Part shown: positions 11,249 to 63,364 of the stretch, in pieces
How the letters are laid out: every line of letters begins with the position of its first letter
How positions within the stretch are numbered: the first letter of the stretch is position 1
NCBI RefSeq assembly: GCF_032191835.1
Contig: NC_083237.1
Coordinates: 5,456,001-5,520,000 of the forward strand
Direction: 5' to 3'
From: Heteronotia binoei
Lineage: Eukaryota
DNA: 64,000 nt
The notes under the pieces: generated by a model
The model's database searches: none
Told to the model about the DNA's origin: nothing
The model's input: only the letters and a program-made list of their open reading frames with translations
Position numbers and translations under genes: made by a program

Positions 11249-11790
11249 TAGAGATGTGAAGGCCCAGGAAAAAGCCAGAAAAATTCAGGGGGAAAAAAAG
11301 GTATTTTCGGTTTTTTTCCTGAAGTCTTTTTTTGGGGGGTTTTCCGAAAAATTGGAAAAATTGAAGAAAAAAAATTGAAAAAATGAAAAGAAAAGAAATC
11401 AATGACGGAACATTTTATTTTAACATGATGAATAAAATATTTTAAGACAAGGTGTTCAAACAGTAAACAGTTCAGGAGATCACTGCTCCATTTGTTACAA
11501 TTATAAATAATTTTTAAAAAGTAAATTGTTTGTAATAATTGTTCGGATACACTATATTTTTAATAAGCTAGTTGTGATAATTTCATGCCAAGGAAAGTTG
11601 TCCATAGTCATATTTTATGTTCCTAAAGTAACAGAATGACTTTCAATCTGGAAAAGAAAAAAATGCTAATGTAGCATTTTTTTTTCAATGTTTCCAAAAA
11701 TTTCCATTTAAAAAAAAAACAACAAACAAACGGGGAAAAAACTGGGATTTTTTTCAAAGCTTCAAAATGTCTGAAAATTTTACATCTCTA
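11249..11790. mobile_element. hAT (Ac-type TIR TAGAGATG) non-autonomous element
   Basis: Inverted termini; homologous to 22871-23602 in opposite orientation. Confidence 0.7.
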
Positions 11791-11921
11791 GCCTAGGCCC
11801 CAGCACTAAGGTTTCAGTCTTGGATTTCAAGAAGCGAGATAAGCAATGGCTTGGTGCGATACAGCGACGGACCTTAAAAATGACTTGAATGCTGAAAGCA
11901 AAAAAAAAAAATGGCTTCTAC

Positions 11922-12112
11922 CTCTAAATAGGAGACTTTCAGAGAGAACTGCCATTCCGTCCTGTTTTCCATTTCTTGAAAGAGCAGCTTGATCACCCGG
12001 GGGATGACTCCTACTGTGGGATCGTTTCCCTGGTTGGCTGTGTACGCCCCTCCCATAGAATAGGTTTTCCCCGATCCCGTCTGCCCGTAAGCCAGAACTG
12101 TAGAGTTGTACC
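11922..12112 (-). CDS. KIF4A: KIF4A coding exon 3 (P-loop YGQTGSGKT ... VSYLE)
   Basis: ORF 11874..12140 contains the kinesin P-loop; AG at 12114-12113, GT at 11921; 191 nt. Confidence 0.96.
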
Positions 12113-14244: not shown

Positions 14245-14658
14245 TACCGTGAGGGACAAGAGAACTCAGAGACATTCAATGACATTGCTGAGCAGTCGGG
14301 TTAGAACTGATAAAAGGAAGACCTTCTTCCCCCATAGGGTGATTAACACGTGGAATTCACTGCCACAGGTGGTAGCGGCTACAAGCATAGACAGCTTCAA
14401 GAGGAGATTGGATAAACATCTGGAGCAGAGGTCCATCAGTGACTATTAGCCACAAGGTATTGTTGGAATTCTCTGTCTGGGGCAGTGAAGCTCTGTATTC
14501 TTGGTGCTGGGGGGGCCACAGTGGGAGGGCTTCTAGTGTCCTGGTCCCAATGATGGACCTCCAGATGGCGCCTGGTCTTTTTGGCCACTGTTTGACACAG
14601 AGTGTTGGACTGGATGGGCCATTGGCCTGATCCAACACGGCTTCTCTTATGTTCTTAT
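14245..14658 (+). mobile_element. CR1 3' fragment
   Basis: RVINTWNSLP motif plus 3' UTR and tail. Confidence 0.85.
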
Positions 14659-14766
14659 GTTTTTAGACACAAGCAAACAGAGGCAACATTTTGCCTTCGT
14701 GACACTAGTCCTTATGAAGACAACACCGCCCCCCACAGCATAATCTTGACAAGCACGCTCTCTCAC

Positions 14767-14881
14767 CTTTAAAAATGCCTTTAATGAGGGGTGCAACGCA
14801 AGTATTGAATATTTCCTCTTGTTCAGCAAATGGATCAAAAACATAGTCGTAGGTAAAAGGTTTGTCATTACCCAAAATGAC
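14767..14881 (-). CDS. KIF4A: KIF4A coding exon 2 ([39 protein letters not shown])
   Basis: Kinesin motor FTYDYVFD motif; AG/GT boundaries; 115 nt, phase consistent with neighbours. Confidence 0.95.
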
Positions 14882-15727
14882 CTGTAAGGAGGAAGAGGAG
14901 AGAGTGGAGGTTATGCTGTTGTCTTTTCAAAACTCCCTTCTGTGGAATGACAGGGCTTGCCTGAAGGACACTCCAGTTACCTCCAATTACCCTCATGGGA
15001 GGAGTTTTTTGTCTTATCCATGTCCTCCTCCAGCTCTCCCCACCACCCCGCTTTGGTCTGCTCATTACACTCCCCTCTGTTCTCTCTGGCTCTTCGATTT
15101 GGGGCAAAGTGCCAGCCCTCTGGTTGCAAAAATTGCTCTTGATAGCCCCTGCACTTTCCACCCATCCTTCCTAGCAATGTTCGGGTCTCACGGAAGCTCT
15201 ATTACCCAAGGTGCACTCGTCTACTGCTTTGTTCTATTGCTTCAGACCAATACAGCTGCCTACTGGGACCGCTGTGAGAGCATCTGACTGGATTTCTGCC
15301 CTCCCCCTAACTGCTACTGGTTCTGCAGCAGCCCAGGCTAAACTAGGTGCTAAGACCCAGCAGATTCTCCACTGCCTCTGGGAAGCTCGGTCCCATTCAC
15401 CAACAAGGCTACAGAGCTGATTACAGGTGCCTATTTAGGACACAGCATTGGCACTGTCAATGGCAGCATGAGCCTCCTATAACCCCAAGACCAGCGCCTT
15501 TTTTTGAGCAGGAACACACAGGAAGGCAGTTCCAGCTGGCTTGGGAGTCCGAGGGTGTGGCCTAATATGCAAATGAGCTTCTGCTGGGCTTCTTCTACAA
15601 AAAAAGCCCTGTGTGAAACAGTGGTGATATCAGGGTGTGTGGCCTACTATACAAATGAGTTCCTGTTGGGCTTTTTCTACAAAAAAGTAAGAAAAAAGCC
15701 CTGACCAAAGCTATTTCTGGTAAGTTA

Positions 15728-15907
<180 letters not shown>

Positions 15908-18103
15908 TTAAAGAAACCGGAGAGGACAAAAACGTCATTTCACAGGAAGCACACCAGTGGAAGGAACTGCCGCTAAAGCCGACACAGCCTTCGAGTTGGA
16001 AGCCCCTTTCTCTTGGCAATGTCAGCGAAGAAGATCTCAGACCTGAGAAGGACCAGCCGTGTCGTGGAGACACATGAAGCTATCGATCCATCAAACCTTC
16101 ATTCCATCAAATTCAGCGTCGTGTGCTTACGCTGGCGGCTCTCCAGGGTCTCCGGCTGAGGTGTTGCACATCACCTCCTACCTCATCCTTTAAACCGGAA
16201 AAGCCGGAGGCTGAACCTGAGACCTTCTGCAGAACAACTTCCTTTGAGCCTTGTCTCTGCCCTGAAACTCCAGAGATCTTCTCCATGAGGCTTCTAATCC
16301 CAGCCTCATGCCTGTACTCAGGCCCCACTAAACTCCTCTCCCCAGGAACATATTTATTGACTTTTCACTACAACTCCTCCTGATTAGCCTTACTTATAAT
16401 GAGATAATTTTGGCCTGAACACCAGCCTAAGACATTTTTTAAAAAAATGTCTCAGCCTCGGCTCTGTAATTCCGTCCGGAAATATCACTTCTTAGACATT
16501 ACCTCTTATTACCCCATTGACTGACATGGCATAATCCACCTGCGGTGTCAGCAAGACAAAGGCAGACTAGAAGTAACATTAATGCTTTTACGTGCAGCAC
16601 CCTAATCTGGTAGAAAAGCAGCGCAGAAAAAATGTTTTAAATAAATAAACATGATGTTTAAAATAATACACGCGCATATATATACACACACAAACACAAT
16701 ACCATGAAATTTAAGTAAAGATCTATTAAAATACTACTGATTTTATCTTAACTGTTGTTAATTATGTTTACTTATAATCTCTGTAATAAATAATCTAATA
16801 AATAGCCATTTATAACATCCTCATTTGCATGTGTAACTTGTACAATATTTTATCTACTACATGAAGATATACAGTTTTTACAGTCCTGTCACAATTGGTT
16901 ACTATCAGATGTGGAAATGCGTTGGCTGAAATATATTATTATTCAGAAATAACATACTGAGGTTTAAAAATAAAGGTTGTACGAATCATGAAGAAAAGTA
17001 TAAAATGTATTCATTTAAAACTAAGGCCTATTATAATATTTAAATCTCTTTCCCATTCCCCACATGACTTGGCTATATAATGGAAAGGAAAATTCCGGTG
17101 AAAATTTTACACCCTCTAACTTGGCAATTGGCCTTAATGTCTTTGTCGGTTAAGAATAATAATGGTTCAGATAGCTTCAAGGTCCCTCGGCGCCTAGCTC
17201 TGAATATCACTATGCGGAGAAGGAGTAAAAAGTTTGAAATGCAAGATTAGAAGCAAGTTCTTGTTCACATAAAGAAAGATAGACCATAGACTGGAATGTG
17301 AAAAAAAGATATAAACCAAACTTAATACCAACAAAATACTGACTTTGGAGTAAAAACACCTTTATCATTACAAGGGTCAGCAAAGTATTAGGTCACACCT
17401 TAAATTAATAATAAAATGTTAATTTTAGAGAACATCCCCGTTTTGATTACCCAACAGCATTAGGCCAGGTCAAAAAGGGGTTTTCACCTGTAAAGCCAAT
17501 AATGTATGCTCTGTATAATTTTTCTGTTTATGTCATAAAAGGTACACAATCCGTGGACAACGTTTGTAACCCTTGAAGAACTTTTTAAGCTGGTGAAAGC
17601 TTTCACCTTCTGTATCCAATTCTCTTCCTTTTTATTCAATAAAAATCTGAGTTTTCCACCTCACAGAATCTCAAGGTGCGTTCCTCATTTTACGCCAGGG
17701 AGGCACACCCATCCATGGGTTTGCAGAACACAGATAACAGGGCGGGTTCTCTGGAGGGAGGACAGAAGCCCCTCCTCCAAATAAATAAACAAACAAGACA
17801 TCAAGCACTTTGAATATCCAAGACGTTCCAACTGGGGGGTGGCCCAACTTTGTTAATGCAAGAACCGCATAGACTAAATGGCTGATGGTTGAGAGCTGTA
17901 AGACATGATCATCAGATGTTTGAAAGCTGCAGGACGCAAACATCAGATGTTTGAGAGCCGCAAGACATGAACGTCAGATGTGTGACAGCAGCAAGGAAAT
18001 AGATGGGAGGGAGAGATGGAAAGAAAGCAACTTTAACTTTACATGCATTCCCCCAAGCCCAACTGGCTAGATTGGCTTGGAGAAGAGATTGAAAGAGAGA
18101 AGT

Positions 18104-18315
18104 GAACATATGAAGCTGCCTTATACTGAATCAGACCCTCGGTCCATCAAAGTCAATATTGTCTACTCAGACTGGCAGCGGCTCTCCAGGGTCTCAAGCT
18201 AAGGTTTTTCATACCTATTTGCCTGGACCCTTTTAGTTGGAGATGCCAGGGATTGAACCTGGGACCTTCTGCTTACCAAGCAGATGCTCTACCACTGAGC
18301 CACCGTCCCTCCCTA
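18104..18315 (-). mobile_element. Full-length tRNA-Ala-like SINE (Squam3-like)
   Basis: Head GTGGCTCAGTGGTAGAGC...GGTTCAATCCC and ATATGTTCA tail; other copies at 7682-7883 and 26880-27235. Confidence 0.75.
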
Positions 18316-18859
18316 AGTGCCAGCTGACAGGGTAGTGGGGGCTTCAAGAGCCACACAAGACGTGTGAAAGACCCACATGTGGCTCCTGAGCCACAGCTGG
18401 CCACCCCTGTTTTAACTGAGCCATCATTCGTTTCCTTTTACCTTTTTAAAATCCAAAATGTTTTATTTAAATATTAACCATGCATATAAAATATTCTCCA
18501 CGTACTGAGTAGTCCCATACAATCGTGAGATGTCAAAAGATTTAAGATCAAACTAGACTAGTGCTGTCACCTTACCACTGAGGTTATTAATATTAAGCAT
18601 GTGCATGGGATAAGGCTTTGTCGAGCCAAAACACACACACACTCACATCCACAATAAAACAAAAAAAAGAGGGTGGGGGGGAGAGAGCAAGTAAGGTTAG
18701 TGCAATGCTATTCAAGATAGAAATTCTGCAGTAGGCGTAGAGTAGGAGTGGGGATATTTATTAATATTTCCAGAACCTTAAATGTCTTCCTGTCCCCCCC
18801 ACCCCCATCAGTACTTAAAGCCCAGCCGCCCAGCTCAGCCCAAAGCCAAGAGTCCCACA

Positions 18860-19310
18860 ATGCAACGCGGCAGGGGGGCCACTCCATAGAGACCTTGCCC
18901 TCCCTCTCCCCGCTGGCCCTTCAGCCCCCTTCCCTATTCAAAGGGGGCTCTGGACACTCCCCGCCACCGGTTCTCCTCACCCCGTCCGGGAGCCGCCAGT
19001 CCCGCGCCCGGCCCTCGCTCCGTCTCCCCTCCCGCCTTCAGCCGCTCGTCTTCAACTCCCAACGTTCAAACACGGCGCGCTCATCCGGGGAACTCGGCGA
19101 CGCCACGCCCACGAAGGGGAGGGAGGGGAAAAAGAGAGAAAGACTGCGGGGGTGACGTCAGGTGCCCGCCGGAAGGATCCGGCGAATCGACGGGACTCTG
19201 AGTGTCATGTGATCCGCGTCTCTCTGAGGGGAAAGGGATGGGGCGGAGAAAGAGGGCCGTTACCTTGGCAACCAGGGGAAGAGGCCTTGTTTTAGGATGG
19301 GGGGCGGGCT
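18860..19310. promoter_or_regulatory. CpG-island promoter of KIF4A: CDE-N4-CHR (CGCGC-CGTG-TTTGAA, minus, 19065-19079), CRE TGACGTCA 19153-19160, ETS CCGGAAG 19169-19175, E-box TCATGTGA 19205-19212, RFX X-box-like GTTACCTTGGCAAC 19259-19272
   Basis: Motifs read directly from sequence; high CpG density; CHR elements are typical of G2/M mitotic genes. Confidence 0.7.
18981..19060 (-). other. KIF4A: Putative non-coding first exon of KIF4A (5' end approximate)
   Basis: GC/CpG-rich region; minus-strand donor GG|GTGAG at 18980; directly downstream of a CDE/CHR-like element. TSS not determinable from sequence. Confidence 0.5.
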
Positions 19311-19316
19311 ACCAAC

Positions 19317-19410
19317 ATTAGATAATAATAATGATGATGATAATAATAATGAAGATTATAATAATGATAATAATAATAGTTATGAAGATCATCATAATGT
19401 TAATGGTGAT
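19317..19410. repeat. (AAT/GAT)n microsatellite
   Basis: Direct inspection. Confidence 0.9.
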
Positions 19411-19500
19411 AATAATAGTTATGAAGATACAGTATTAAATAAAAGCTGCGATGTATTTAAACAAAACAATCCCATTTCGTGGGCTCTAGAAATACCTTTA

Positions 19501-20518
19501 AAACAGGGGTGGCCAACGGTAGCTCTCCAGATGTTTTTTGCCTACAACTCCCATCAGCCCCAGCCATCAGCCATCTATTAAGGAATTTTGGACATTTACT
19601 TGTGCCTTTGCAGTGACTTTGGGGGAAGGGTGGATGTTCCTTATGCACCTTTCATGGAATGATTCATTGCTGAGTACTTGCGATGGTTTTGATATTATGC
19701 AGTAAACCAGGTAACTCTCCAGATGTTTTTGCCTACAACTCCCATCAGCCCCAGCCATTGGCCATGCTGGCTGGGGCTGATGGGAGCTGTAGGCAAAAAA
19801 ACATCTGGAAAGCTACCGTTGGCCACCCCTGCTGTAGAGAGTAGACTGTATAGCAGGGGTGGCTGATGGTAGCTCTCCAGATGTTTTTTTGCCTACAACT
19901 CCCATCAGCCCCAGCCATCTATTAAGGAATTTTGGACGTTTACTTGTGCCTTTACAGTGACTTTGGGTGAAGGGTGGATGTTCCTTACGCACCTTTCATG
20001 GAATGATTCATTGCTGAGTACTTGTGATGGTTTTGATATTATGCAGTAAACCAGGTAGCTCTCCAAATGTTTTTGCCTACAACTCCCATCAGCCCCAGCC
20101 ATTGGCCATGATAGCTGGGGCTGATGGGAGCTGTAGGCAAAAACATCTGGAAAGCTACCTTTGGCCACCCCTGCTGTAGAGAGTAGACTGTATAGCAGGG
20201 GTGCTGATGGTAGCTCTCCAGATTTTTTTTGCCTACAACTCCCATCAGCCCCAGCCATCAGCCATCTATTAAGGAATTTTGGACATTTACTTGTGCCTTT
20301 ACAGTGACTTTGGGTGAAGGGTGGATGTTCCTTACGCACCTTTCATGGAATGATTCATTGCTGAGCACTTGTGATGGTTTTGATATTATGCAGTAAACCA
20401 GGTAGCTCTCCAGATGTTTTTGCCTACAACTCCCATCAGCCCCAGCCATTGGCCATGCTTGCTGGGGCTGATGGGAGTTGTAGGCAAAAAACATCTGGAG
20501 AGCTACCGTTGACCACCA
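19501..20518. repeat. About 345-bp tandem triplication containing a fold-back hAT-like MITE
   Basis: ATCTATTAAGG marker at 19573, 19917, 20264; a single MITE copy also lies at about 3365-3499. Confidence 0.88.
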
Positions 20519-20939
20519 ATGTTCTATTTTAACGTGTTTTAAATATATTGAAAGGTGGGTTTTTTAAAATTAAAGGAAACATACACAACGCCATGAAAAA
20601 TACAAAAAAAACCAATTGTCAGAAATTTACATGGTGGAAGTTGGTTTTCCTGTAAATTAATTTTTAAAAACCCTTTTTTCCTATAAAGGCTTATGTTTTC
20701 ATGTAGCAGTTTTATTCATTCCATATTGAAAACATTAGCCTTTATAGGAAAGAGGGTTTTTAAGAAAAAATATTTTACTAAAGGACCAACTGCCATCATG
20801 TAATGCAAGGCAAATTTCTGACACAACGACTTTTTTTGTATTTTTCCTTCATAATTAAGGCTATTTTTCCTTTTGTCATTGCGAGTTTTCTCCAGGAAAA
20901 AAACCCTTTTATTCGGGATTTAATGTGGATTTTAAAGGG

Positions 20940-21246
20940 CATGGGCGTTACAGCCAAGGACTCAAAACCTAGGCGCGCATGCGCAAATTTGGATCTTTCT
21001 TGCACCTACATGACACAGCGTCTTAAATGTCCCGCCCCGTCTCGTCTTATCATCCAATCAGTGCAACGAACACGGCTCACGCAAGGACCGCCTTTCTCCA
21101 GAGAGGCTGCCCAGTCCTGGAGAGGTTTGCTGTCGCTGCTTTTGATTGGTTGTCTGGTGAGACGAGCCTTTCTGGAGTGCAGGAGGAGACTTTGCTTGTG
21201 GGAACCGAGTTTCAGCCTCCCTCTGCCTGGGTTGACCTCTTAAGTG
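20940..21246 (+). promoter_or_regulatory. PDZD11: Putative PDZD11 promoter and non-coding first exon
   Basis: NRF1-like GCGCATGCGC at 20975-20984, GC box, CCAAT/ATTGG boxes, candidate donors GTGAGA at 21157 and GTGAGT at 21247. Confidence 0.5.
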
Positions 21247-21414
21247 GTGAGTGCGAGCAAAGCATTGCAACGCTTTATTAAAGCAGAAGCAATGGGGAGC
21301 ATTGGTGGAGGGTGGATTCCTCCCCTTTGCATCCCAAGGGGAGGCAGAACTGGCGTGCAGGGCATCTATGCTGGCATTAGGCGCTGCAGTCGGTTGCATT
21401 TGGGTGGTGGGTGC

Positions 21415-22500
21415 AGCACGTAAGAAGCAGGCCGAAATTCTGCAGGGAATTGAAAACGGATCAGCCAGTATCATAATGCCCCTGTATAAATCTATGGTGC
21501 GGCCCCATTTGGAGTACTGTCTACAATTCTGGTCACCGCACCTTAAAAAAGATATTATAGCTTTGGGAAAAGTCCAGAAAAGGGCAACTAGAATGTTTAA
21601 AGTGTTGGAACACTTTCCCTATGAAGAAAGGTTAAAACGCTTGGGGCTCTTTAGCTTGGAGAAACGTCAACTGAGGGGTGGCATGAGAGAGGTTTACAAG
21701 ATTATGCATGGGATGGAGAAAGTAGAGAAAGAAGTACTTTTCTCCCTTTCTCGTGGGCACGCCATGAAATTGCTGAGCAGTCAGGTTAGAGCGGATAAAA
21801 GGAAGTACATACTTCAACCAAAGAGTGAATTCACTCCCAAGGGAGGTGGTGGCGGCTACAAGCACAGACAGCTTCAAGAGGGGGTTGGATCAACATATGG
21901 AGCAGAGGTCCATCAGTGGCTCTTAGCCACAGCGTATTGTTGGGACTCTCTGTCTGGAGTAAGTGATGCTCTGCATTCATGGTGCTTGGGGGGGCACAGT
22001 AGGGGGGGCTTCTAGTGTCCTGGTGCCACTGGTGGACCTCCTGATGGCACCTGGGGTTTTTTGGCCACTGTGTGATACAGAATATTGGACTGGATGGGTC
22101 ATTGGCCTGATATAACATGTATGTTCTTGGGTCTGGGGCAAGTGATGTTCTGTATTCTTGGCGCTTTGAGGAGGGGGTCAACAGTGGGAGGGCTTGTAGT
22201 GTCCTGGCCCCGCTGATGGACCTCCTGATGGCACCTGGAGTTTTTTGCCCGCTGTGTGATACAGAGTATTGGACTGGATGGGCCATTGGTCCAATACAAC
22301 ATGTATGTTATGATGTCTGGGGCAGTGATACTCCGTCTTCTTGGTGCTTGGGAGGGGCAACAGTGGGAGGACTTCTGGTGTCCTGGCCCCACTGATGGAC
22401 CTCCTGATTGCACCTGGGAGGTTTTTGGCTGCTGTGTGATACAGAGTGTTGGACTGGATGGGCCTTTGTCCTGATCCAACATAGCTTCTCTTGTGTTCTT
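21415..22500 (+). mobile_element. CR1 LINE RT 3' end with duplicated 3' UTRs in PDZD11 intron 1
   Basis: YKSMVRPHLEYCLQFWSP...VQKRAT...RLKRLGLFSLEKR motifs. Confidence 0.9.
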
Positions 22501-22688
22501 TCCCCCCCCCTCTTGTGTTCTTATGAGATGTCTCCAGCCCCTCCCTGGAGGTTGGTAGCCCTAGCAGGTGAGAAGGTTGGCTTCCTGATTTATTGAAAGC
22601 CTGGTAGGGGACCCCTCTGTTATCTTGTCTCCCCAGTTTAGCCCTGGAACCGTCAGCCGTGCCTCCCCAGCATATACTGACTTCCAGA

Positions 22689-22790
22689 ATGGATGGAGGA
22701 GGAGGAGGAGGTCGGATCCCGTACGATGATTACCCAGTGGTATTCCTTCCTCCCTATGAGAGCCCCCCGGTGTGGATCCCCCCTCATGAG
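22689..22790 (+). CDS. PDZD11: PDZD11 coding exon 1 (MDGGGGGGRIPYDDYPVVFLPPYESPPVWIPPHE)
   Basis: RIPYDDYPVVFLP matches the PDZD11 N-terminus; acceptor AG at 22686-22687, donor GT at 22791. Confidence 0.95.
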
Positions 22791-22870
22791 GTGTGTAGCT
22801 ACAGATCCTGCTCTGTTTATTGTGTCTATTTGATACCAACAGAAGGTTATATTGGAATCCTTGTTTGCAC

Positions 22871-23602
22871 TAAAGATGTAAAATTTCCAGAAATTTTGAA
22901 ACTCGGGAAAAAAACGGAAATTTTCAGAAAAGTTGAAAAAAAAATGCCACTTTTTTCTTTTCCAGATTGAAAGTCATTCTGTTACTTTAGGAACATAAAA
23001 TATGACTATGGACAATTTTACTTGGCATGAAATTATCACAGCTAGCATATTAAAAATGTAGTGTATCCAAACACTTATTACAAACAGAATTTACTTTTTA
23101 AATAATATTTATTTGTAATTATAACAAATAGAGCAACAGTTTCCTGAACTGTTTACTTGGTTATGTGGAACAGACAAAAAAAAAAACCCTCCACAAAACA
23201 ATTTTTAAAAATCCAGAAATAACAATTTTTCGTATTGCCTCTCCACAGTAATAAAAATTAAAAACTAATTCTCATAAAAAGAATTGAAGAGGGGGGAAGT
23301 GTATAGAAGGGAGCGTAGGACAAAGTTTCAATGAACGGGCATGGCTTAGGACTTCCTTGCCCTCGGGGCACAGAATTAGAATAATCTGATACCATACATA
23401 TTTTTTAGAAATGATTTGGAAAATATTTGAACACCTTGTCTTAAAATATTTTATTCATCATGTTAAAATAAAATGTTCCATAGTCAATTTTTTTCTTTTC
23501 TTTTTCAATTTTTCCAATTTTTTTGGGAAAAAACAAGGTTTCAGGGAAAAAACGGTTTTTTCCCTAATTTTTCCGGGTTTTTTCTGGACCTTCACATCTC
23601 TG
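22871..23602. mobile_element. hAT (Ac-type) non-autonomous element
   Basis: Termini TAAAGATGT / ACATCTCTG; TSD GTTTGCAC / GTTTGGAC (7 of 8 match). Confidence 0.8.
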
Positions 23603-23755
23603 GTTTGGACATGCAGGTATCCTTTCAGGGACTCCTGATTTCTTCCCACTCTTCTAAGAGCAGAAGTAGGCATGGTCTTTTAGCACTTAAGACCGTCAGC
23701 CTAAGATTTCCATGATGGAATACACCGTGGCATTCAATATTTGGTTTGTTCCTAG

Positions 23756-23839
23756 AGAATCTACCATTCGGATTATAACAACGAGCTGACCCAGTTCCTG
23801 CCGCGCACAATTGTGCTGAAGAAACCCCCAGGAGCTCAG
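23756..23839 (+). CDS. PDZD11: PDZD11 coding exon 2 (RIYHSDYNNELTQFLPRTIVLKKPPGAQ)
   Basis: Hand translation; AG/GTAAG; 84 nt. Confidence 0.95.
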
Positions 23840-23992
23840 GTAAGATTCAGCTAGCCAGCTGTGGGAGAAACTTTCAAGCGCCTCTGTGTGTGCTGAGACT
23901 ATTATTCTGCTTTGCTATTGAGAGTTTTGACAGCTGAGTATCCACCATTCATGCATGTCGACATCTGCTCCTCTTCTCTGTTTCACCTTTAG

Positions 23993-24049
23993 CTGGGTTT
24001 TAACATCCGGGGAGGAAAAGCTTCTCAGCTGGGAATCTTCATCTCCAAG
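23993..24049 (+). CDS. PDZD11: PDZD11 coding exon 3 (LGFNIRGGKASQLGIFISK)
   Basis: PDZ carboxylate-binding LGF loop; AG/GT; 57 nt. Confidence 0.95.
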
Positions 24050-25496
24050 GTTGGTGGATTTCTTGGCTCTGATGTGTGACTGGCTAGTCCAGCTACTTCT
24101 GTAGCAAGCCATTAATACAAGTTTCATTCATTGACTTTTAAGCATTGTACTTTGCCTTATCACAAGGGCTTTGGACAAATGAAGGATTCAAACATATTCC
24201 TGATTGACCGTTAAGAACATGCAGTTTTCCCCCAAAAGCAACTTTATCCGTATCACTTCTGGCCCCAGTTAGCATCCCTGCATCTCAGTTCTAATCTTTT
24301 TCCTTTGGTTGTTCTTTCAAGCACCGCAAAAGTCAGGCATCTGACTGTGGTCTTAGGAGAGTGGTCAGCAGTATTCCCTCTAAACTGAGTTACTGGGAGG
24401 TAGCTCACCGTTTTTTTAGCCTCTGGCTCACACTTTTTTGTCTCAGCTCAGGTAAAAAAGGCTCCAGAGCAAATTAATTGATGCAGTTGTTCACCACTTG
24501 AATGCCAGTAGGTCACAATGTAGAATTTTTGCTCGCAAAACTCCACAGCTCAGAGGCAGTATTGGTCAGGTAAATAACTGCCTGGGATTGTCAGTTGTGG
24601 TTCAAGAAGAAGATATTGGATTTATATCCCGCCCTCCACTCCGAAGAGTCTCAGAGCGGCTCACAATCTCCTTTACCTTCCTCCCCCACAACAGACACCC
24701 TGTGAGGTGGGTGGGGCTAAGAGAGCTCTTACAGCAGCTGCCCTTTCAAGGACAACCTCTGCCAGGGCTATGGCTGACCCAAGGCCATGCCAGCAGGTGC
24801 AAGTGGAGGAGTGGGGAATCAAACCCGGTTCTCCCAGATAAGAGTCCACACACTTAACCACTACACCAAACTGGCTCTCAGTGACAGAGCCTCTGCTTTG
24901 CATACAGAAGGTCCCAAGTTCAGTCCCTGGTATTATTTTAAAAAGGATCTGGCGGAAGGTGTAAAGTGAAAGACCTTTAAATGAGATCCTGGAGTGCTGT
25001 TGCCAGTCTGAGCAGGCTTATTATTATTATTATTGAATCACCTCATCCCAGTCGAAGTTAGGCTCCAGGTGATGTGCAAAAATTAAAATACATACAATGG
25101 TCATTAAAAACAAACAGTCTCCTCCTCTGTGTCCCTGAAAGAGTTTTATACTCTGCAGACTGAAATCTGCTGGTTATCCCTGGCCCTAAAGAGGTCCAGC
25201 TGTCCTCAATGGGGGACAGGACCTTTTCAGTACTGGCCCCGACCTGGTGGAAAGCTCTGCTGGAAGAGACTAGGGCCCTGCGGGATCTTTTACAATTTCG
25301 CAGGGCCTGTAAGCCAGAGATGCTCCACCAGGCTTTTGCTTGAGGACAGCAACAGTTGCCAAACTGGCACCCCTCCCCTCCCCCCCTTCTAGGGGGCCCC
25401 CATTGCTATGTCTACAATGCAGGAACTGGTCTGAGCAGGCTTATTATTATTATTATTATTGAATCACCTCATCCCAGTCGAAGCTAGGCTCTAGGC

Positions 25497-25839
25497 CAGG
25501 GGTCCTCAAACTACAGCCCGCGGGCCAGATGTGGCCCACTGAGGACGTTTATGCGGCCCGCCGGGTTATGGCAAAATCAGACTGGAAGTGACGTTCGACC
25601 TAAACTCGCGTTAGCAACGCACGCTTCCGGCACTGGGCTGAGGCAGCGGAGACGGAGTGTGAGGTGATACCGAGGTGAGGTGAGTTCCCAGGCCGGGGTG
25701 TGTGGTGTGGGGAAGGGAGAGAGATGCAGAAGATGGAGAACTGACGGCCCGCGGCCTTGTACAGTAACGGCAGTCCGGCCCTCCAACAGTCTGAGGGACA
25801 GTGAACTGGCCCCCTATTTAAAAAGTTTGAGGACCCCTG
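25497..25839. mobile_element. hAT-Charlie MITE
   Basis: TIRs CAGGGGTCCTCAAACT / AGTTTGAGGACCCCTG; TSD CTCTAGGC / ATCTAGGC. Confidence 0.88.
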
Positions 25840-25989
25840 ATCTAGGCGATGTGCCTCCTGATGGCACCTGGGGTTTTTTGGCTGCTGTGTGATGCAGAGT
25901 ATTGGACTGGATGGGCCATTGGTCCAATACAACATGTATGTTCTTATACATGTGATCATCAAATGCATACAGTGATCATCAAAAACAAT

Positions 25990-26460
25990 TTGCTAAAAAC
26001 TAATTACAAACCCAATGACATCTGTTACAAAGTGCGACCAGTTCCTGCATTGTAGGCATTGCAATGGGGGCCCCCTAGAAGGAGGGGAGGGGCGTCAGCT
26101 CAGCAACTGTTGCTGTCCTCAAGCAAAAGCCTGGTGGAGCATCTCTGGCTTACAGGCCCTGCGAATTTGTAAAAGATCCCGCAGGGCCCTAGTCTCTTCC
26201 GGCAGTGCTTTCCACCAGGTCGGGGCGATGACTGAAAAGCTCCTGTCCCCCATTGAGAACAGCTGGACCTCTTTAGGGCCAGGGATAACCAGCAGATTTC
26301 AGCCTGCGAAGCATAAAACTCTTTCAGGGACATAGAGGAGGAGGCGGTCTCGTAGATACATCAGTCCCAGGCCACTCGAGGCCTTAAAGATCGTAACCAA
26401 AACCTCGAATCTAACTCCGTACTCGACTGGAAGCCAGTGTCACTGGCGCAGCAAAGGTAG
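25990..26460 (-). mobile_element. L2-like LINE 3' fragment; inverted partial copy at 25110-25429
   Basis: ORFs 25129..25392(+) and 26100..26333(-) translate to near-identical peptides. Confidence 0.55.
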
Positions 26461-26602
26461 AATATGTGCTTGATGGACCAATGGTCTAATTCAGCACAAG
26501 GCAGATTCATCCATATTCATGCCCAGTAGAACTGGTGGCCACCCCTGTCATTTGCAAAGCTGGCCCAGCTTTGACTGCTCTCACTCCCTCTCCTATTTTC
26601 AG

Positions 26603-26701
26603 GTGATCCCGGATTCAGATGCCCATCGAGCCGGACTGCAGGAGGGAGACCAAGTCCTAGCTGTGAACGATGTGGATTTCCAGGATATTGAACATAGTAA
26701 G
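26603..26701 (+). CDS. PDZD11: PDZD11 coding exon 4 (VIPDSDAHRAGLQEGDQVLAVNDVDFQDIEHSK)
   Basis: PDZ core; AG/GTGAG; 99 nt. Confidence 0.96.
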
Positions 26702-27305
26702 GTGAGGGTCTTCCTTCTCTGAGATTGTCCATTGCAGGGGGCAAAATTTATTTATTGTAAACCATGCCAGCATGACTCAAACTCCAGGAAATGGCCTCAA
26801 AGGCTAGCAATGCACTCTGTGCCTAAGGTCTGCCTGGGGAAGGGACCACAATTTCTGCTACTTTTGAGTTCCAAGGAGGAACATATGAAGCTGCCTTGTA
26901 CTGAATCAGACTCTCGGTCCATCAAAGTCAGTCTTGTCTACTCAGACTGGCAGTGGCTCTCCAGGGTCTCAAGCTGAGGTTTTTCACACCTACTTGCTTG
27001 GACCCCTTTTAGTTGGAGATGCTGGGGATTGAACTTGGGACCTTCTGCTTCCCAAGCAGATGCTCTACCACTGAGCCACCGTCTCTTCCCTGACCAGCAG
27101 CTGCTCTCCAGGATCTCAAGCTTAGGTTTTTCCACCCCTATTTGCCTGGACCCTTTTTAGTTGGAGATGCCGGGGATTGAACCTGGGACCTTCTGCTTCC
27201 CAAGCAGATGCTCTGCTACTGAGCCACCGTCCCTCACCAAAGAGTTTGACCACAGAGAATCTGTTTGGAACGACTCAGTTCCCTTGTTTTCCCTTCCCCT
27301 TCCAG

Positions 27306-46574: not shown

Positions 46575-47129
<555 letters not shown>

Positions 47130-53265: not shown

Positions 53266-53271
53266 TTTATT
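53266..53271 (-). terminator. Candidate polyA signal AATAAA of the Harbinger-derived gene
   Basis: TTTATT on plus, about 205 nt past the stop codon. Confidence 0.55.
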
Positions 53272-53475
53272 AAAATTTTAAAAAGGACAACAAAACATGG
53301 CGAATATCCAAACCGCAAACCAGCAGCTAAGAGTAGCCGGTCTTCAGCAAACAACGAAAAGGTTCAAAAACAAAACGGTTACAGCCATCCCAGCAGCATA
53401 AACCCGAACAGCAGCTTCGCGAGGTTCCCTCATCCAGAACACAGCGCCGTCGCCGTACAAAAGGGGACAGGACAA

Positions 53476-54198
53476 CTAGCCACCCGCCATCACCCTCAAA
53501 CAGTGGCGCCGGCTGGCCAGCATGAATCTGGCCACCACGTCACGCACCTCCTGTCCCTCTAGAAGATGGCTCGTGACAGGGGGATCTCTCCACTTGAGCA
53601 CGACCGTTTTTGGAGCTGCGCGTCGGGCGAGTGGAGGGCCCCGCCCATTCTCCTCGCAGATGTTGTGGAGGACTATGCACGCCAAGACGATCCGATCCAC
53701 ATGTCCCTTTTGAACTTGGAAAGGCGCAGTGAGGCACCCCCAACGGGACTTCAGCCGCTCAAAAGCGTACCGTGCCTCGTATTGCGCCAGGCCCGCGGTG
53801 TGGTTGAAGTAACTTTCAACTGGGCCCCTGCACAGCCGGTAAGGAGTCATGAGCCACCGTCTCATAGGGTACGCCCAGTCCCCAACGATCAGGGGCGGAA
53901 CTGCAACACCGTCGAGAGTGAGAGTCGGGTTCCCCGGAACAAATGCCCCAACATCCATACCGTGGCAGAGTGCAGATGTGTGGAGCAAGAAGGAACCGTA
54001 GGTCCTTCCAGCCAGTGCAAGCTCCACATCTATGAATCTCCCCGTGTGGTCCACTGTGCCCTGAACCACGACGGACGAGTAGTCCTGCAGCCAGTCGCTG
54101 CTTTCAGGCACATTTTCCGAAACAGGGAGACGGAACGATGCCTCGTCTATAGCTCCAATACAGTGCGGGAATCCCAGGCTGCTGAACCCCGACATTAT
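53476..54198 (-). CDS. PIF/Harbinger transposase-derived protein, exon 2 (RNase H-like domain)
   Basis: T-rich CAG acceptor at 54200-54199; 240 aa open with GFPHCIGAID, VDHTGRF, GDWAYP, AFERLKSRWGCL and ACIVLHNICE motifs. Confidence 0.9.
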   Translation of the reverse strand: MMSGFSSLGFPHCIGAIDEASFRLPVSENVPESSDWLQDYSSVVVQGTVDHTGRFIDVELALAGRTYGSFLLHTSALCHGMDVGAFVPGNPTLTLDGVAVPPLIVGDWAYPMRRWLMTPYRLCRGPVESYFNHTAGLAQYEARYAFERLKSRWGCLTAPFQVQKGHVDRIVLACIVLHNICEENGRGPPLARRAAPKTVVLKWRDPPVTSHLLEGQEVRDVVARFMLASRRHCLRVMAGG

Positions 54199-56464
54199 CT
54201 GAAAAAAAAACCAGGAAGCGTTAAAGAATGTTAAAAGAACAACTTACTAGGAAAAAGGGAAGGAAAGGTCCCCTGTGCAAGCACCAGTCGTTTCCGACTC
54301 TGGGGTGATGTTGCTTTCACAAAGTTTTCACGGAAGACCATTTGACCGGGTGGTTTGCCATGGCCTTCTACGCTTCCCCCCACAGCAAGCTGGGGACACA
54401 TTTGACCGACCTCGGAAGGATGAAAGGCTGAGTCAACCTCGAGCCGACTACCTGAAAAACCAGCTTCCACCAGGGATTGAACTCAGGTCATGAGCAGAAG
54501 ATGATATTGGATTTATATCCCGCCCTCCAGTCCGAAGAGTCTCAGAGCGGCTCACAATCTCCTTTCCCTTCCTCCCCCACAACAGACACCCTGTGAGGTG
54601 AGTGGGCTGAGAGGGCTCTCACAGCAGCTGCCCTTTCAAGGACAACCTCTGCCAGAGCTATGGCTGACCCAAGGCCATGCTAGCAGGTGCGAGTGGGGAA
54701 TCAAACCCGGCTCTCCCAGATAAGAGTCCACACACTTAACCACTACACCAAACTGGCAGAGCTTAGGACTGCAGAACTGCAGCTTTAACACTCTGCGCCA
54801 CGGGGCTCTTGCCTCTTACTGGGCTACAAAAACTTTATACCACTTGGTTGGGCACAGCTACAGAGACAGTTATAAAAATTGCTTTTCTAGGACTTGAAAT
54901 GTTATCACTGTTTGTTACAGTGAGCCAGTTTAAAGTGTGCGGACTCTTATCTGGGAGAACCGGGTTTGATTCCTCACTCCTCCACTTGCAACTGCAACAG
55001 AATAGAACAAAATCCAGTGGCTCCTTTAAGAAAGAAGGCAAAAGATGAGATGGCTGGACAGTGTTACTGATGTAACAAACACGAATTTGAGCAGACTTCG
55101 GAGGATGGTGGAAGACAGGAGGGCCTGGCGTGACTTGGTCCATGGGGTCGCAAAGAGTCGGACTCGACTGTGCGACTGAACAACAACAAAGCACCTTTAA
55201 GACCAACAAAGTTTTATTCAGAATGTAAGCTTTCCTATGCATGCATACTTCATCAGTCAATGGAATGGGATAAAGAGAGCATAAGCTAATTTGCTATGTA
55301 TTGAATGTTGTCTGTGTAATTCTAATCTCAACTTTAACAAAGTTAATTTTTTAAAAAAAGAGAGAACAGACATTTTCCCAAAGTGACGGAGGCAATGCAC
55401 TTTATCTTTGGTCCGTTGGAAGCTCAGCCTGTTGGACCTGCAGTTCAATAAATCCCCAAACGTACGAAGTAATACAGATTGTCCAATGGGACGAAGGTGC
55501 CATCCACTCAGTGGCAAATTTAAGACCAACAAAGTATTTTCAAGGCATTAGCTTTCATGTGGACACACAAGAGGGCAGCCGTGTTGGTCTGAAGCAGTTG
55601 AATAAAGCGGGAGTCAAGTTCACCTTTAAGACCAACCAAGTTTTATTGCTGAAGTGTGCTTAGAGAGCACAGGAAAGCTTACGTTCTCAATAAAACTTGG
55701 TTGGTCTTAAAGGTGCCACTTGACTTTTGATTTGTTCACGTGGGCACACTCTTTGCGAGACAAATGAAATGGCATTGGAAACAGAAATTATATGGCTGCC
55801 CACCTAGACCTATTCCCCTATGGGCCCACAACTATGCCAGGGGTGGCCAAACTTTCCTAATGTAAGAGTCACATTGAATGAATGTCAGATATCTGAGAGC
55901 CACAACATATGGATGTCAGATATTTGAGGACAGGCAGGAAAATAGATGGAGGATGAAGGAGAGATGGAAAAAAAGCAACATTAACTTTAAATGCAGCTGG
56001 CTTGGCTTGGAGAAGTGATTTAAAGGGACAAATGCCTTCTCCACGCTGGCCAATAGGGTGGAGGCGAGGCTTCTAAGAGTCACACAATATGTGTGAAAGA
56101 GCCACAGTTTGGCCACTCCTATATTTAAAAGTTAGTAGAAAGCTGGGCCTGGTGAACTCACACTCCAGTGCAGGGGGGGGGGGGCAAACTTGCTTAATGT
56201 AAGAGCCACATAGAATAAACATCAGATGTTGGAGAGCCACAAGACGGGAAGGAAAGCAAGTAAATGGAGGTGGGGGAGAGAGGTGGGAAGAAAGCCACTT
56301 TAAATGCATTTTTCAAGCCGCCAGCTGGCTTGCAGAAGTGATTTAAAGCTGGCTGCAAGGTGGCGGGGGGGGGGGGGGTTCGAGAGCCACACAATAGGTG
56401 TGAAAGAGCCACACTAACGCATCCGTGGCAAGGCAACATTTTTAACAGGACAAAAGAAAAATAC

Positions 56465-56884
56465 CTCCATGACATTGGGACCCAGGCAAACAACCTTGCT
56501 GAGCAGCTCCTCCTCGATCGCTGAGCAAACTTCCACCACCGCGTCTTCCACTGTGGCCAGCTCCACGCCAAAGCGCTCCGCGAGGTCTCGGAAGGGATAG
56601 CCGCTGGCCAGGTAGAAAAGGGCCAGGGCCACCCGCTTCTCCACTGGAAGGCGCCGCACCCCGTCCGCCTGCTGCAGGCGCCCTTGCAAAGCCTCCACGA
56701 GTTGGGCAAAAGCAGCCTGGGTCATTCGGAAATGCTGACGCCATTCCCTCTCGCCCCCCTGGGCCTGCACGAAAGCCTCCCACCAGCCATGGCCCCGGGA
56801 GAAGGAAAACCCAACTCCTGATGCTGGAGAGGCCCCAGCAAGAGCGCGCCGGCGCCTCTTCGGAGCTCTCCCCCCCTGCAGCAT
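56465..56884 (-). CDS. PIF/Harbinger transposase-derived protein (HARBI1/ALP1-like, DDE_Tnp_4 family), exon 1; start codon uncertain
   Basis: WWE...W..HFRM and PVEKRVALALFYLASG...FRDLAERFGV..ATV HTH motifs; donor GAG|GTAT at 56464, phase 0. Confidence 0.85.
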
Positions 56885-57218
56885 TTGCAAGCCTGACTCT
56901 CCTTCTCGCTGCGGCCAGAGCCGTCGGTGGGCGATCTTGGCTGTCTCTGAGCAAACCGAGAATCAGCGGCAGCGTTGCCCGGACCAGCATCTACCGGGTC
57001 TCCTCCATCCCTGGCTCCCGGGAAGCGCACACACCTGGAGGACCAGAGATTCTATTTCAAAGCATCCGGCAAAAGTGCCTCCCTGAGATTGGCGCAAAAC
57101 TGGCCAATGAGGAGAGAGTCCCGCGAAACTCAGCGCGGGGGGGGGGAGGAGGAGAGGGAGACAGCGACCCCTGGTGGGGAAAGGCCGCGGAGTTCCCCGC
57201 GCAAAAGGAAAAGGAAGG

Positions 57219-58603: not shown

Positions 58604-58675
58604 TGGAGATGCCGGGGATCGAACCCGGGGCCTCATACATGCAAAGCATGCGCTCTACCACTGAGCTACATCCCC
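58604..58675 (-). tRNA. tRNA-Ala (TGC)
   Basis: Reverse complement GGGGATGTAGCTCAGTGG...GGCATCTCCA; paired acceptor stem; T9 terminator, and no SINE body follows. Confidence 0.95.

Positions 58676-59694: not shown

Positions 59695-60009
<315 letters not shown>

Positions 60010-62938: not shown

Positions 62939-63364
<426 letters not shown>

What the first reader, a model, noticed from the sequence alone, without database searches (positions are those of the whole stretch)
53266..56990. Spliced, intact Harbinger-transposase-derived gene with a broken DDE triad inside a tRNA/histone cluster: candidate squamate domesticated chromatin factor
Seen: two exons (56884-56465 and 54198-53476) join through a canonical phase-0 GT-AG intron of 2266 bp (GPNVME|IMSGF) into an open frame of at least 380 aa. 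The N-terminus is basic (PKRRRR), the HTH region is intact, and an AATAAA lies about 205 nt after the stop. The intron is riddled with SINE, hAT, PLE and BovB insertions while the exons have none. Against the recalled PIF/Harbinger consensus, D1 (GAID) and D2 (GDxAY) are kept, but the catalytic E of (V/I)ExAFG is R (codon 53770-53772), the NRKG and HD motifs are gone, and GAIDG has become GAIDE. I saw no TIRs, TSD or Myb/SANT partner ORF. Established: Harbinger transposases have been domesticated as HARBI1 (vertebrates) and ALP1 (plants; catalytically degenerate, PRC2-associated). Inference: this is a separate, non-catalytic domesticated gene, possibly chromatin-related, placed between H2B and tRNA-Ala/H4.
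Basis: partly seen in the sequence, partly recalled or inferred. Interest (0 to 1): 0.78.

Follow-up and report, generated by a model that had tools for sequence, protein, structure and literature searches.

The report
Gecko-specific dead Harbinger transposase gene
This is a real, spliced gecko gene that was captured from a jumping-gene (Harbinger) enzyme, has lost a key DNA-cutting residue, and has been kept intact at the same spot in a histone/tRNA cluster in at least two gecko genera; it is a young new example of a known kind of gene birth whose function is untested.

Summary
The two exons (56884-56465, 54198-53476, minus strand) join into the 380-aa protein that NCBI already predicts as LOC132584296 of Heteronotia binoei. 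A transcript contig spans the exact 54198|56465 junction.

The protein has a Harbinger HTH plus a DDE_Tnp_4 core with D158, D247 and R283 in place of the catalytic E.

I found a syntenic orthologue in Gekko kuhli: the same H2B-H4-tRNA-Ala-[gene]-H2B block, the same intron phase, an intact 415-aa frame, and the same derived states (GAIDE, DWAYP, E to R). dN/dS is about 0.4 (bootstrap CI 0.33-0.54). No stops or frameshifts occur where neutral drift predicts 7-9 stops and about 26 indels.

The same interval is empty in Sphaerodactylus and Eublepharis. The pair nests inside an all-gecko Harbinger clade that includes elements with TIRs and Myb partner genes.

So this is a gekkonid domestication. 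It is not squamate-wide and not HARBI1. The intron is inherited from the transposon, so splicing is not evidence of domestication. A chromatin role is untested.

The scan noted other Harbinger-derived genes elsewhere in this genome (s1-321090, s1-328417, s1-318574), but not this locus.

The parts
56885..56975 (-). 5' UTR (minimum extent); the transcription start lies at or upstream of 56975
   Evidence: Transcript contig of run X1 covers 56709-56975. Depth falls to 0 by 57086.
56465..56884 (-). Exon 1 CDS, aa 1-140 (start ATG at 56884-56882)
   Evidence: 74% nucleotide identity to Gekko kuhli L003:10184-10535.
56846..56860 (-). Basic stretch KRRRR (aa 9-13); a poly-Arg run is also present in the Gekko orthologue
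   Evidence: A nuclear-localisation role is inference only.
56537..56656 (-). HTH_Tnp_4 helix-turn-helix (aa 77-116), part of a sigma-region-4-like domain spanning aa 54-130
   Evidence: Pfam 26.6 bits. VIA-align matches to sigma region 4 at Z 5.3-6.7. Lowest dN/dS of the gene, 0.17-0.32.
54199..56464 (-). Phase-0 GT-AG intron of 2266 nt, 71% interspersed repeats
   Evidence: Junction 54198|56465 seen in a transcript contig. Same position as the 217- and 260-nt introns of leopard-gecko Harbinger elements.
53476..54198 (-). Exon 2 CDS, aa 141-380, plus the stop at 53478-53476; DDE_Tnp_4 / RNase H-like core
   Evidence: 71% nucleotide identity (with the 3' UTR) to L003:14132-15189.
54145..54147 (-). 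Codon of D158 (first catalytic Asp, kept; the context is GAIDE instead of GAIDG)
53878..53880 (-). Codon of D247 (second catalytic Asp, kept; the context is DWAYP instead of DGAYP)
53770..53772 (-). Codon of R283, at the position of the catalytic Glu (E in 90% of 70 relatives; R in both Heteronotia and Gekko)
53266..53475 (-). 3' UTR with AATAAA at 53271-53266
   Evidence: Covered by transcript contigs of X1. Alignable to the Gekko 3' UTR (71% identity). Gekko has a poly(A) signal about 211 nt after its stop.
58604..58675 (-). tRNA-Ala(TGC), upstream synteny anchor
   Evidence: The same tRNA lies at L003:7236-7309, L007:12212-12283 and L010:13027-13098.
59695..60006 (-). Histone H4 gene, synteny anchor
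62939..63319 (-). Histone H2B gene, upstream synteny anchor
46575..46955 (-). Histone H2B gene, downstream synteny anchor

Best explanation
LOC132584296 is a host gene of gekkonid geckos, born from the transposase gene of a gecko-specific Harbinger transposon that landed between tRNA-Ala(TGC) and an H2B gene of a histone/tRNA cluster.

Timing: the capture happened after Gekkonidae split from Sphaerodactylidae and Eublepharidae, and before Heteronotia and Gekko diverged.

What was lost and kept: the element's ends and its Myb partner gene(s) are gone. The transposase gene kept its own intron, promoter-proximal exon and poly(A) signal. Before the two genera split, the protein lost the catalytic Glu (now R283) and several other conserved active-site-region motifs, so it very probably cannot cut DNA. 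The sigma-4-like HTH and the RNase H-like fold have stayed under purifying selection.

Inferred mechanism (not shown): it acts as a non-catalytic DNA- and/or partner-binding protein. It would use the HTH, which is the most constrained part, and the dead core as a scaffold, as in other domesticated Harbinger transposases that work with a Myb/SANT partner. My odds: about 0.85 that it is a selected, catalytically dead host gene; given that, about 0.45 for a regulatory/chromatin adaptor and about 0.25 for a decoy that restrains related Harbinger elements.
For: Gene model and transcript:
- The model equals the NCBI protein.
- A contig of run X1 joins 54198 to 56465 exactly. X1 covers the exons and UTRs but not the unique intron or flanks, so it behaves as a transcriptome.

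Orthologue in Gekko kuhli (L003):
- The block H2B, H4, tRNA-Ala(TGC), gene, H2B is collinear.
- The intron has the same phase and position, and the 415-aa frame is intact.
- It shares the derived states GAIDEASF, loss of NRK and HD, DWAYP, and E to R.

Selection:
- dN/dS is 0.42 by NG86 (bootstrap CI 0.33-0.54), 0.34 by YN00 and 0.37 by ML. It is 0.42 without CpG codons.
- Neutral drift at the local non-coding divergence gives P(no stop) of 5e-5 to 1.4e-3.
- About 26 gap events are expected; 4 are seen and all are in frame (P = 1e-7 and 0.0014).
- Identity between the two orthologues rises from 0.43 to 0.83 with family-wide conservation (Mann-Whitney p = 2.5e-8).

Fold: the AlphaFold2 model has pLDDT 89 and pTM 0.87. 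It matches piggyBac and Tn5 transposases at Z 9.6 and integrase cores at about Z 7.

Origin:
- The pair (support 100) nests in a 22-row clade (support 99) made only of gecko sequences.
- That clade includes leopard-gecko elements with Myb partner genes; one of them (L002) also has 25-bp TIRs and a 3-bp TSD. Both have an intron at the same codon as here.

Empty orthologous interval: Sphaerodactylus townsendi (2.5 kb), Eublepharis macularius (4.8 kb) and assembly GCA_029204185.1 (1.1 kb) have no remnant of the gene.

Effect of the E to R change: mutating a single DDE residue drastically reduces PING's ability to catalyse transposition (PMC4671723).
Against: - Only two species carry known orthologues, and transcription is shown only in Heteronotia.
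- Constraint is moderate. dN (0.27) is close to the divergence of alignable non-coding flanks (K2P 0.27-0.39). dS (0.66-0.78) exceeds the dS of the neighbouring H4 (0.27). The C-terminal 55 aa evolve almost neutrally (dN/dS 0.6-0.9).
- Three 2026 RNA-seq runs from two samples show almost no reads on the exons.
- The expressed allele in X1 carries a -2 and a -1 deletion in two G runs (at 56870 and 56754). Together they put aa 5-43 out of frame before the frame is restored.
- No protein product, partner or binding site is known.
- Loss of catalysis is inferred from sequence, not assayed.
Confidence: 0.8

Rival explanations
1. It is a host-encoded decoy. A dead transposase that still binds the ends or the Myb partner of related Harbinger elements would dampen their transposition, as truncated P-element repressors do. 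It would have been kept because the same transposon lineage stayed active in geckos. This is a rival for the mechanism, not for domestication.
For: The source lineage is gecko-specific. It includes elements with Myb partner genes in the leopard gecko, one of them with perfect 25-bp TIRs, and annotated relatives in Heteronotia itself. The gene evolves fast, with a long stem branch (0.84) and tips of 0.42 and 0.49. The HTH is the most conserved part.
Against: No test of binding or inhibition exists. Identity to the nearest transposases is only 38-48%, so recognition of their ends or partners may be lost. Two sequences cannot show positive selection.
Confidence: 0.2
2. It is a transcribed but functionless relic of a transposon copy whose frame is open by luck.
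For: Expression is low in three RNA-seq runs. One allele has a compensated frameshift in the N-terminus. dN is near the non-coding divergence.
Against: The frame is intact in two genera separated by about 0.33 substitutions per neutral site. Simulated P(no stop) is at most 1.4e-3. Four in-frame indels are seen against about 26 expected. dN/dS never reached 1 in 1000 bootstraps (maximum 0.65). Conservation tracks the family's structural core (p = 2.5e-8).
Confidence: 0.05
3. It is still part of a mobile Harbinger element, either autonomous or mobilised in trans.
For: It shares domains and the intron with true elements.
Against: There are no TIRs, no TSD and no Myb gene. It sits at the same chromosomal site in two genera. 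The catalytic Glu is replaced in both. No close paralogue exists among annotated Heteronotia proteins: its 90% cluster has one member and the next hit is 45% identical.
Confidence: 0.02
4. It is the ordinary vertebrate HARBI1 orthologue.
For: Automatic names of several relatives read 'putative nuclease HARBI1'.
Against: It nests with 99% support in a clade of gecko-only sequences that contains Harbinger elements with Myb partner genes. The site is empty in two other gecko families. The triad is broken. A verified HARBI1 sequence could not be put in the tree, because none of the 10 candidates I looked up was one.
Confidence: 0.01

Closest known systems
Gecko Harbinger transposons with Myb partner genes (e.g. 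Eublepharis macularius L002 and L001; transposases P0005 and P0006)
   Same: They share the HTH_Tnp_4 + DDE_Tnp_4 architecture and a phase-0 intron at the identical codon (K|I before M-D/S-G-F). They fall in the same all-gecko clade and are 42-44% identical in protein sequence.
   Different: The elements keep the D-D-E triad and all conserved motifs and carry Myb-like genes; L002 also has 25-bp TIRs and a 3-bp TSD. The gene here has none of these, is fixed at one syntenic site, and has R at the catalytic Glu.
HARBI1 (vertebrate domesticated Harbinger transposase; Kapitonov and Jurka 2004, as cited in PMC12262214 and PMC4671723)
   Same: Both are host genes derived from a Harbinger transposase without TIRs.
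   Different: From my own knowledge, HARBI1 is ancient across vertebrates and keeps the acidic triad. This gene is a separate and much younger capture inside geckos with a broken triad.
ALP1 of Arabidopsis (PRC2-associated domesticated PIF/Harbinger transposase; PMC4671723) with its Myb-derived partner ALP2 (PMC7282668)
   Same: It is a domesticated Harbinger transposase with non-conservative changes in the DDE triad (DGA in ALP1; D-D-R here) that presumably acts as a non-catalytic adaptor.
   Different: It is an independent event in plants. Association with PRC2, or with any partner, is untested here.
HDP1/HDP2 of Arabidopsis (PMC5339849) and the co-domesticated PIF gene pairs of insects (PMC9710019)
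   Same: These are recurrent domestications of Harbinger transposases as regulatory proteins.
   Different: Those cases involve a co-domesticated Myb partner. No partner was found in this window, and the rest of the genome could not be searched.
The 'apparently domesticated' Harbinger element that anchors the harbiTRIM locus of squamates (preprint PMC12262214)
   Same: It is a Harbinger-derived, transcribed gene kept at a fixed locus in squamates.
   Different: That locus is described as about 200 My old, shared by iguana, common lizard and leopard gecko, and flanked by TRIM, butyrophilin and PRY-SPRY genes. The gene here is absent from the leopard gecko's orthologous interval and lies between histone genes.

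Membership tests
PIF/Harbinger transposase superfamily (homology) | HTH_Tnp_4 plus DDE_Tnp_4 domains | tested here: met
   DDE_Tnp_4 scores 61.4 bits (cut-off 24.8). HTH_Tnp_4 scores 26.6 bits (cut-off 27) and is supported by the fold.
PIF/Harbinger transposase superfamily (homology) | RNase H-like catalytic-core fold | tested here: met
   The AlphaFold2 model has pLDDT 89.3. VIA-align gives Z 9.6 to piggyBac and Tn5 transposases and about Z 7 to retroviral integrase cores. Foldseek alone gave nothing below E 1e-3.
Active Harbinger transposon | Intact D-D-E catalytic triad | tested here: not met
   The triad is D158, D247, R283. E is present in 90% of 70 relatives. R is shared with Gekko.
Active Harbinger transposon | Terminal inverted repeats and a 3-bp target-site duplication | tested here: not met
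   The only inverted repeats around the gene are SINE copies. No match to the L002 TIR was found in the window or in L003.
Active Harbinger transposon | Adjacent Myb/SANT-like partner gene | tested here: not met
   tblastn of the two L002 Myb-like ORFs against the whole window gave E above 9. The same query finds the partner in L001 at E 4e-34.
Active Harbinger transposon | Multiple dispersed, similar copies | tested here: inconclusive
   There is one copy in the window and no annotated paralogue above 45% identity. The whole genome could not be searched at the DNA level.
Domesticated transposase gene | Orthologues at the same chromosomal site in different species | tested here: met
   Heteronotia and Gekko kuhli share the collinear block H2B-H4-tRNA-Ala-gene-H2B.
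Domesticated transposase gene | Purifying selection on the coding sequence | tested here: met
   dN/dS is 0.34-0.42 (CI 0.33-0.54). The frame is kept against neutral expectation. Site conservation tracks the family core.
Domesticated transposase gene | Transcribed as a host mRNA | tested here: met
   A spliced contig with the exact junction is seen in run X1, with cover of the UTRs. Only trace reads are seen in three other RNA runs.
HARBI1 orthologues | Falls in the vertebrate HARBI1 clade and at its conserved locus | tested here: not met
   It nests in a gecko-only transposon clade. It lies in the histone cluster, and that site is empty in two other gecko families. No verified HARBI1 sequence was in the tree.
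ALP1-like PRC2 accessory proteins | Physical association with PRC2 or a Myb-derived partner | not testable with these tools
   This needs AP-MS or co-IP.

The most novel reading that the evidence does not exclude
The gene is a fixed, host-encoded 'dead transposase' decoy that restrains the gecko Harbinger lineage it came from. It would do so by occupying the elements' ends or titrating their Myb partner. Its fast evolution would then reflect an arms race with those elements. It would be a young vertebrate case of a transposase turned into a repressor of its own family.
Probability: 0.2. Interest if true: 0.75.

Novelty: new member of a known kind. Interest (0 to 1): 0.5.

Why it matters
Domesticated Harbinger transposases (HARBI1, ALP1, HDP1 and the insect pairs) are old, so the steps of their capture are blurred. 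In this case the steps are still readable:
- The donor transposon lineage survives in related geckos with the same intron.
- The empty orthologous site survives in two gecko families.
- Two genera carry the captured gene with the same active-site changes.

That gives a dated before-and-after comparison for how a transposase becomes a host protein: loss of ends and partner, then loss of catalysis, then retention of the HTH. It also gives a tractable system to ask whether such genes start as repressors of their own transposon. Together with the other Harbinger-derived genes the scan noted in this genome, it suggests that Harbinger capture has happened repeatedly in squamates.

Tried and rejected
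- TIR and TSD search around the gene: only SINE-to-SINE inverted repeats were found. The leopard-gecko TIR has no match within 4 mismatches in the window or in L003.
- Myb partner search in the window: nothing.
- Word-index protein searches with exon 2, an exon-2 profile and an exon-1 profile: no further orthologue, and the best other hits are 45% identical.
- Only the exhaustive phmmer search exposed the exon-1-only Gekko kuhli model P0055.
- The nearest tree neighbours, P0183 (Eublepharis) and P0023 (Sphaerodactylus, a KRAB fusion), were checked as possible orthologues. Neither locus has histones or tRNA-Ala.
- I tried to identify a bona fide HARBI1 among ten hits of about 340-356 aa. None was one, so HARBI1 is not in the tree.
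- PDB sequence search: no relative. Foldseek: nothing below E 1e-3.
- Raw RNA-seq runs X3-X5: near-zero depth on the exons, so they give no junction, strand or end information.
- A published date for the Heteronotia-Gekko split was not found in the papers I opened.
- dS as the only yardstick was rejected. It is about twice the local non-coding divergence, so I added tests based on stops, indels and site pattern.
Full report
**1. The observation**

On the minus strand, 56884-56465 and 54198-53479 are open frames of 140 and 240 codons. They are joined by a GT...AG intron of 2266 nt in phase 0, with the stop at 53478-53476. The joined 380 aa are identical to the NCBI prediction 'uncharacterized protein LOC132584296 [Heteronotia binoei]' (P0001). 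The window is GCA_032191835.1, CM063339.1, at about 5.5 Mb.

Pfam finds HTH_Tnp_4 on exon 1 (26.6 bits, cut-off 27) and DDE_Tnp_4 on exon 2 (61.4 bits). AATAAA lies 205 nt after the stop.

- D158 and D247 are kept.
- The residue at the catalytic Glu is R283 (codon 53772-53770). E is present there in 90% of 70 relatives.
- GAIDG has become GAIDE, and the following His is Ser.
- The NRK and HD motifs are gone, and DGAYP has become DWAYP.

There are no TIRs, no Myb/SANT ORF and no second copy in the window. 71% of the intron consists of repeats that recur in the window, against none of the CDS. I did not verify the repeat class names.

**2. Transcription**

The one reads call gave mixed results.

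Run X1 is labelled 'DNA?' but behaves as a transcriptome:
- It covers the exons and UTRs (53266-54198 and 56528-56975).
- It has zero depth on the unique intron and on both flanks.
- It holds a contig that joins 54198 to 56465, skipping exactly 2266 nt. The predicted splice is therefore real.

Three raw RNA-seq runs of 2026 (two samples, about 6% of each read) show almost nothing on the exons. Expression is therefore low or tissue-restricted.

The X1 allele differs from the reference. It has a 2-nt and a 1-nt deletion in two G runs (at 56870 and 56754). Together these put aa 5-43 into another frame and then restore it. The reference frame is the one that matches Gekko and the transposon family (poly-Arg and the WWE motif), so I take the X1 form to be a variant allele. 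This remains unexplained.

**3. The intron is not evidence of domestication**

The nearest proteins (38-48% identity) are gecko and lizard 'HARBI1/ALP1-like' predictions.

Two of them in the leopard gecko belong to Harbinger elements with Myb partner genes:
- L002 has perfect 25-bp TIRs, a 3-bp duplication and two Myb-like ORFs.
- L001 has a Myb partner.

This agrees with the earlier scan note s1-325727.

Both transposase genes have a phase-0 intron (217 and 260 nt) at exactly the codon where this gene is split. The intron was therefore inherited from the element. Here it has merely been inflated by repeats.

**4. An orthologue and synteny**

The exhaustive phmmer search turned up a 176-aa Gekko kuhli model (P0055). 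It is 60% identical to aa 4-140 and ends at the same exon boundary.

Its locus (L003) is collinear with the window: H2B, H4, tRNA-Ala(TGC), the gene, H2B. Alignable non-coding DNA lies between these genes.

Exon 2 is not annotated there, but it is present and intact. The structure is a GT donor, an intron of about 3.6 kb, a CAG acceptor before ATA-ATG, 239 codons, a stop, and a poly(A) signal about 211 nt later. The product is 415 aa.

Gekko shares every derived state: GAIDEASF, loss of NRK and HD, DWAYP, and Arg at the catalytic Glu. The active site was therefore already broken in the common ancestor. Both lineages have kept the frame since.

**5. Selection**

dN/dS between the two orthologues:

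| Method or subset | dN/dS |
|---|---|
| NG86 | 0.42 (bootstrap CI 0.33-0.54, never above 0.65) |
| YN00 | 0.34 |
| ML | 0.37 |
| NG86, codons without CpG | 0.42 (CI 0.28-0.60) |
| HTH region | 0.17-0.32 |
| Core | about 0.34 |
| Last 55 aa | 0.6-0.9 |

A caveat applies. dS (0.66-0.78) is about twice the divergence of alignable non-coding flanks (K2P 0.27-0.39) and twice the dS of the neighbouring H4 (0.27). dN (0.27) is therefore not far from the local neutral rate.

For that reason I added three tests that do not rest on dS:
- Stops. Neutral drift at K 0.27-0.36 leaves the frame stop-free in 5e-5 to 1.4e-3 of simulations, with 7-9 stops expected.
- Indels. The flanks carry 41 gap events in 1779 nt, of which 8 are multiples of three. 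The CDS carries 4 internal gaps in 1134 nt, all in frame (Poisson P = 1e-7; P = 0.0014 for all four being in frame).
- Site pattern. Identity between the two orthologues rises from 0.43 at columns that vary in the transposase family to 0.83 at columns that are at least 90% conserved (Mann-Whitney p = 2.5e-8). The old fold is therefore still constrained.

In short, the gene is under real but moderate purifying selection and evolves fast.

**6. Fold**

With a 73-row alignment, AlphaFold2 gives pLDDT 89.3 and pTM 0.87. The first 30 or so residues are disordered.

VIA-align matches:
- piggyBac and Tn5 transposases at Z 9.6
- Tn4430 TnpA at Z 8.3
- retroviral integrase cores at about Z 7
- aa 54-130 to sigma-factor region 4 at Z 5.3-6.7

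There is no solved Harbinger relative by sequence. Foldseek alone found nothing significant. I could not measure how close R283 lies to the two Asp residues.

**7. Origin and age**

In a 59-row tree, the Heteronotia-Gekko pair has support 100, a stem of 0.84 and tips of 0.42 and 0.49. It sits inside a 22-row clade with support 99. Every named member of that clade is a gecko: Eublepharis, Sphaerodactylus, Euleptes, Paroedura and Heteronotia. The clade includes the two leopard-gecko elements with Myb partner genes described in section 3. Non-gecko squamates lie outside it.

A look-up with the window's H2B protein fetched the same histone/tRNA block from other species. In each, the interval between tRNA-Ala(TGC) and the next H2B has no trace of the gene:

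| Species or assembly | Locus | Interval length |
|---|---|---|
| Sphaerodactylus townsendi | L007 | 2.5 kb |
| Eublepharis macularius | L010 | 4.8 kb |
| GCA_029204185.1 (species not identified) | L015 | 1.1 kb |

tblastn at E up to 1 gave only chance-level hits in these intervals.

The usual gecko tree, which I give from memory and did not test, is Eublepharidae, then Sphaerodactylidae, then Phyllodactylidae plus Gekkonidae. On that tree, one gain on the gekkonid stem is more parsimonious than repeated loss. The gene is thus gekkonid as far as shown, not squamate-wide. It cannot be HARBI1, which is ancient in vertebrates.

No annotated orthologue exists in Paroedura or Gekko japonicus. That says little, because even the Gekko kuhli annotation missed exon 2.

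**8. How it probably works**

Shown: it is a spliced mRNA encoding a protein with a constrained HTH and RNase H-like core, lacking the catalytic Glu and other family-conserved residues.

From the literature: changing one DDE residue drastically reduces the rice PING element's ability to catalyse transposition. ALP1, another Harbinger derivative with a broken triad, works as a non-catalytic partner in a chromatin complex (PMC4671723).

Inferred: this protein binds DNA and/or a Myb/SANT-type partner without cutting. The lowest dN/dS lies in the HTH, which fits retained DNA or partner binding.

Two mechanisms remain open:
- a decoy that restrains related Harbinger elements.

The decoy reading fits three points: the donor lineage persisted in geckos, the gene is young, and it evolves fast. 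Neither mechanism was tested.

The position in the histone cluster is conserved, but nothing shows that it matters for function.

**9. Novelty**

The gene model is already in RefSeq as an uncharacterised LOC. I found no paper on it.

The 'apparently domesticated' Harbinger element at the squamate harbiTRIM locus (PMC12262214) seems to be a different, older gene. It is shared with the leopard gecko and flanked by TRIM and butyrophilin genes.

The scan has noted other Harbinger-derived genes elsewhere in this genome (s1-321090, s1-328417, s1-318574). I did not check those notes, and none covers this locus.

Verdict: this is a new, well-supported member of a known kind. Its value lies in its youth and in the surviving donor elements and empty sites.

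Noticed in passing
window 56754 and 56870 (exon 1): The transcript allele in run X1 lacks 1 nt in a G6 run and 2 nt in a G7 run. This shifts aa 5-43 into another frame and then restores it. It also carries P80A, Y96D and a synonymous D360 change. It could be an allelic variant, a divergent H. binoei lineage, or a homopolymer error; this is unresolved.
   Followed up: partly
L002:9485-19225 (Eublepharis macularius, GCA_028583425.1 CM053277.1): This is an apparently complete Harbinger element of about 9.7 kb. It has perfect 25-bp TIRs, a TAC duplication, a two-exon transposase, a Myb-like ORF (12781-13407) and a second Myb-like ORF on the other strand (15719-16276).
   Followed up: partly
L005:10001-14455 (Sphaerodactylus townsendi, P0023): This is a 546-aa protein with KRAB plus DDE_Tnp_4, next to a RING-finger gene. 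Salvator merianae P0025 is named 'KRAB domain-containing'. These may relate to the KRAB-Harbinger fusion noted by the scan (s1-328417) or to the harbiTRIM-linked element of PMC12262214.
   Followed up: no
L003:10001-10903 (Gekko kuhli KAL8177154.1): The deposited model holds only exon 1 of the orthologue and is tagged 'UNVERIFIED_CONTAM'. It nonetheless lies on a 62-Mb chromosome collinear with the Heteronotia locus. The intact exon 2 at 14165-14881 is unannotated.
   Followed up: yes
window 34647-63319 versus L007, L010 and L015: The whole block H2B, H4, tRNA-Ala, H2B, H3, then tRNA-Leu/Asp/Ser/Phe/Gly/Gln keeps its order across gecko families. Neighbouring blocks in several squamates hold a ZBED1-like gene of about 900 aa beside H2B (L008, L009, L011, L013, L016).
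   Followed up: partly
window 7808-27234: ARAGORN calls seven minus-strand tRNA-like genes with anticodons unusual for vertebrates (Pro-GGG, Thr-GGT, Ala-GGC). They may be SINE heads or wrong-strand calls.
   Followed up: no
P0012 (Paroedura picta): A 418-aa Harbinger transposase of the gecko clade is named 'M-phase inducer phosphatase 3 isoform X4' in RefSeq. This is probably a mis-joined or misnamed model.
   Followed up: no
run X1: The run is listed as 'DNA?' but covers only exons and carries the spliced junction, so it is best treated as RNA-derived.
   Followed up: partly
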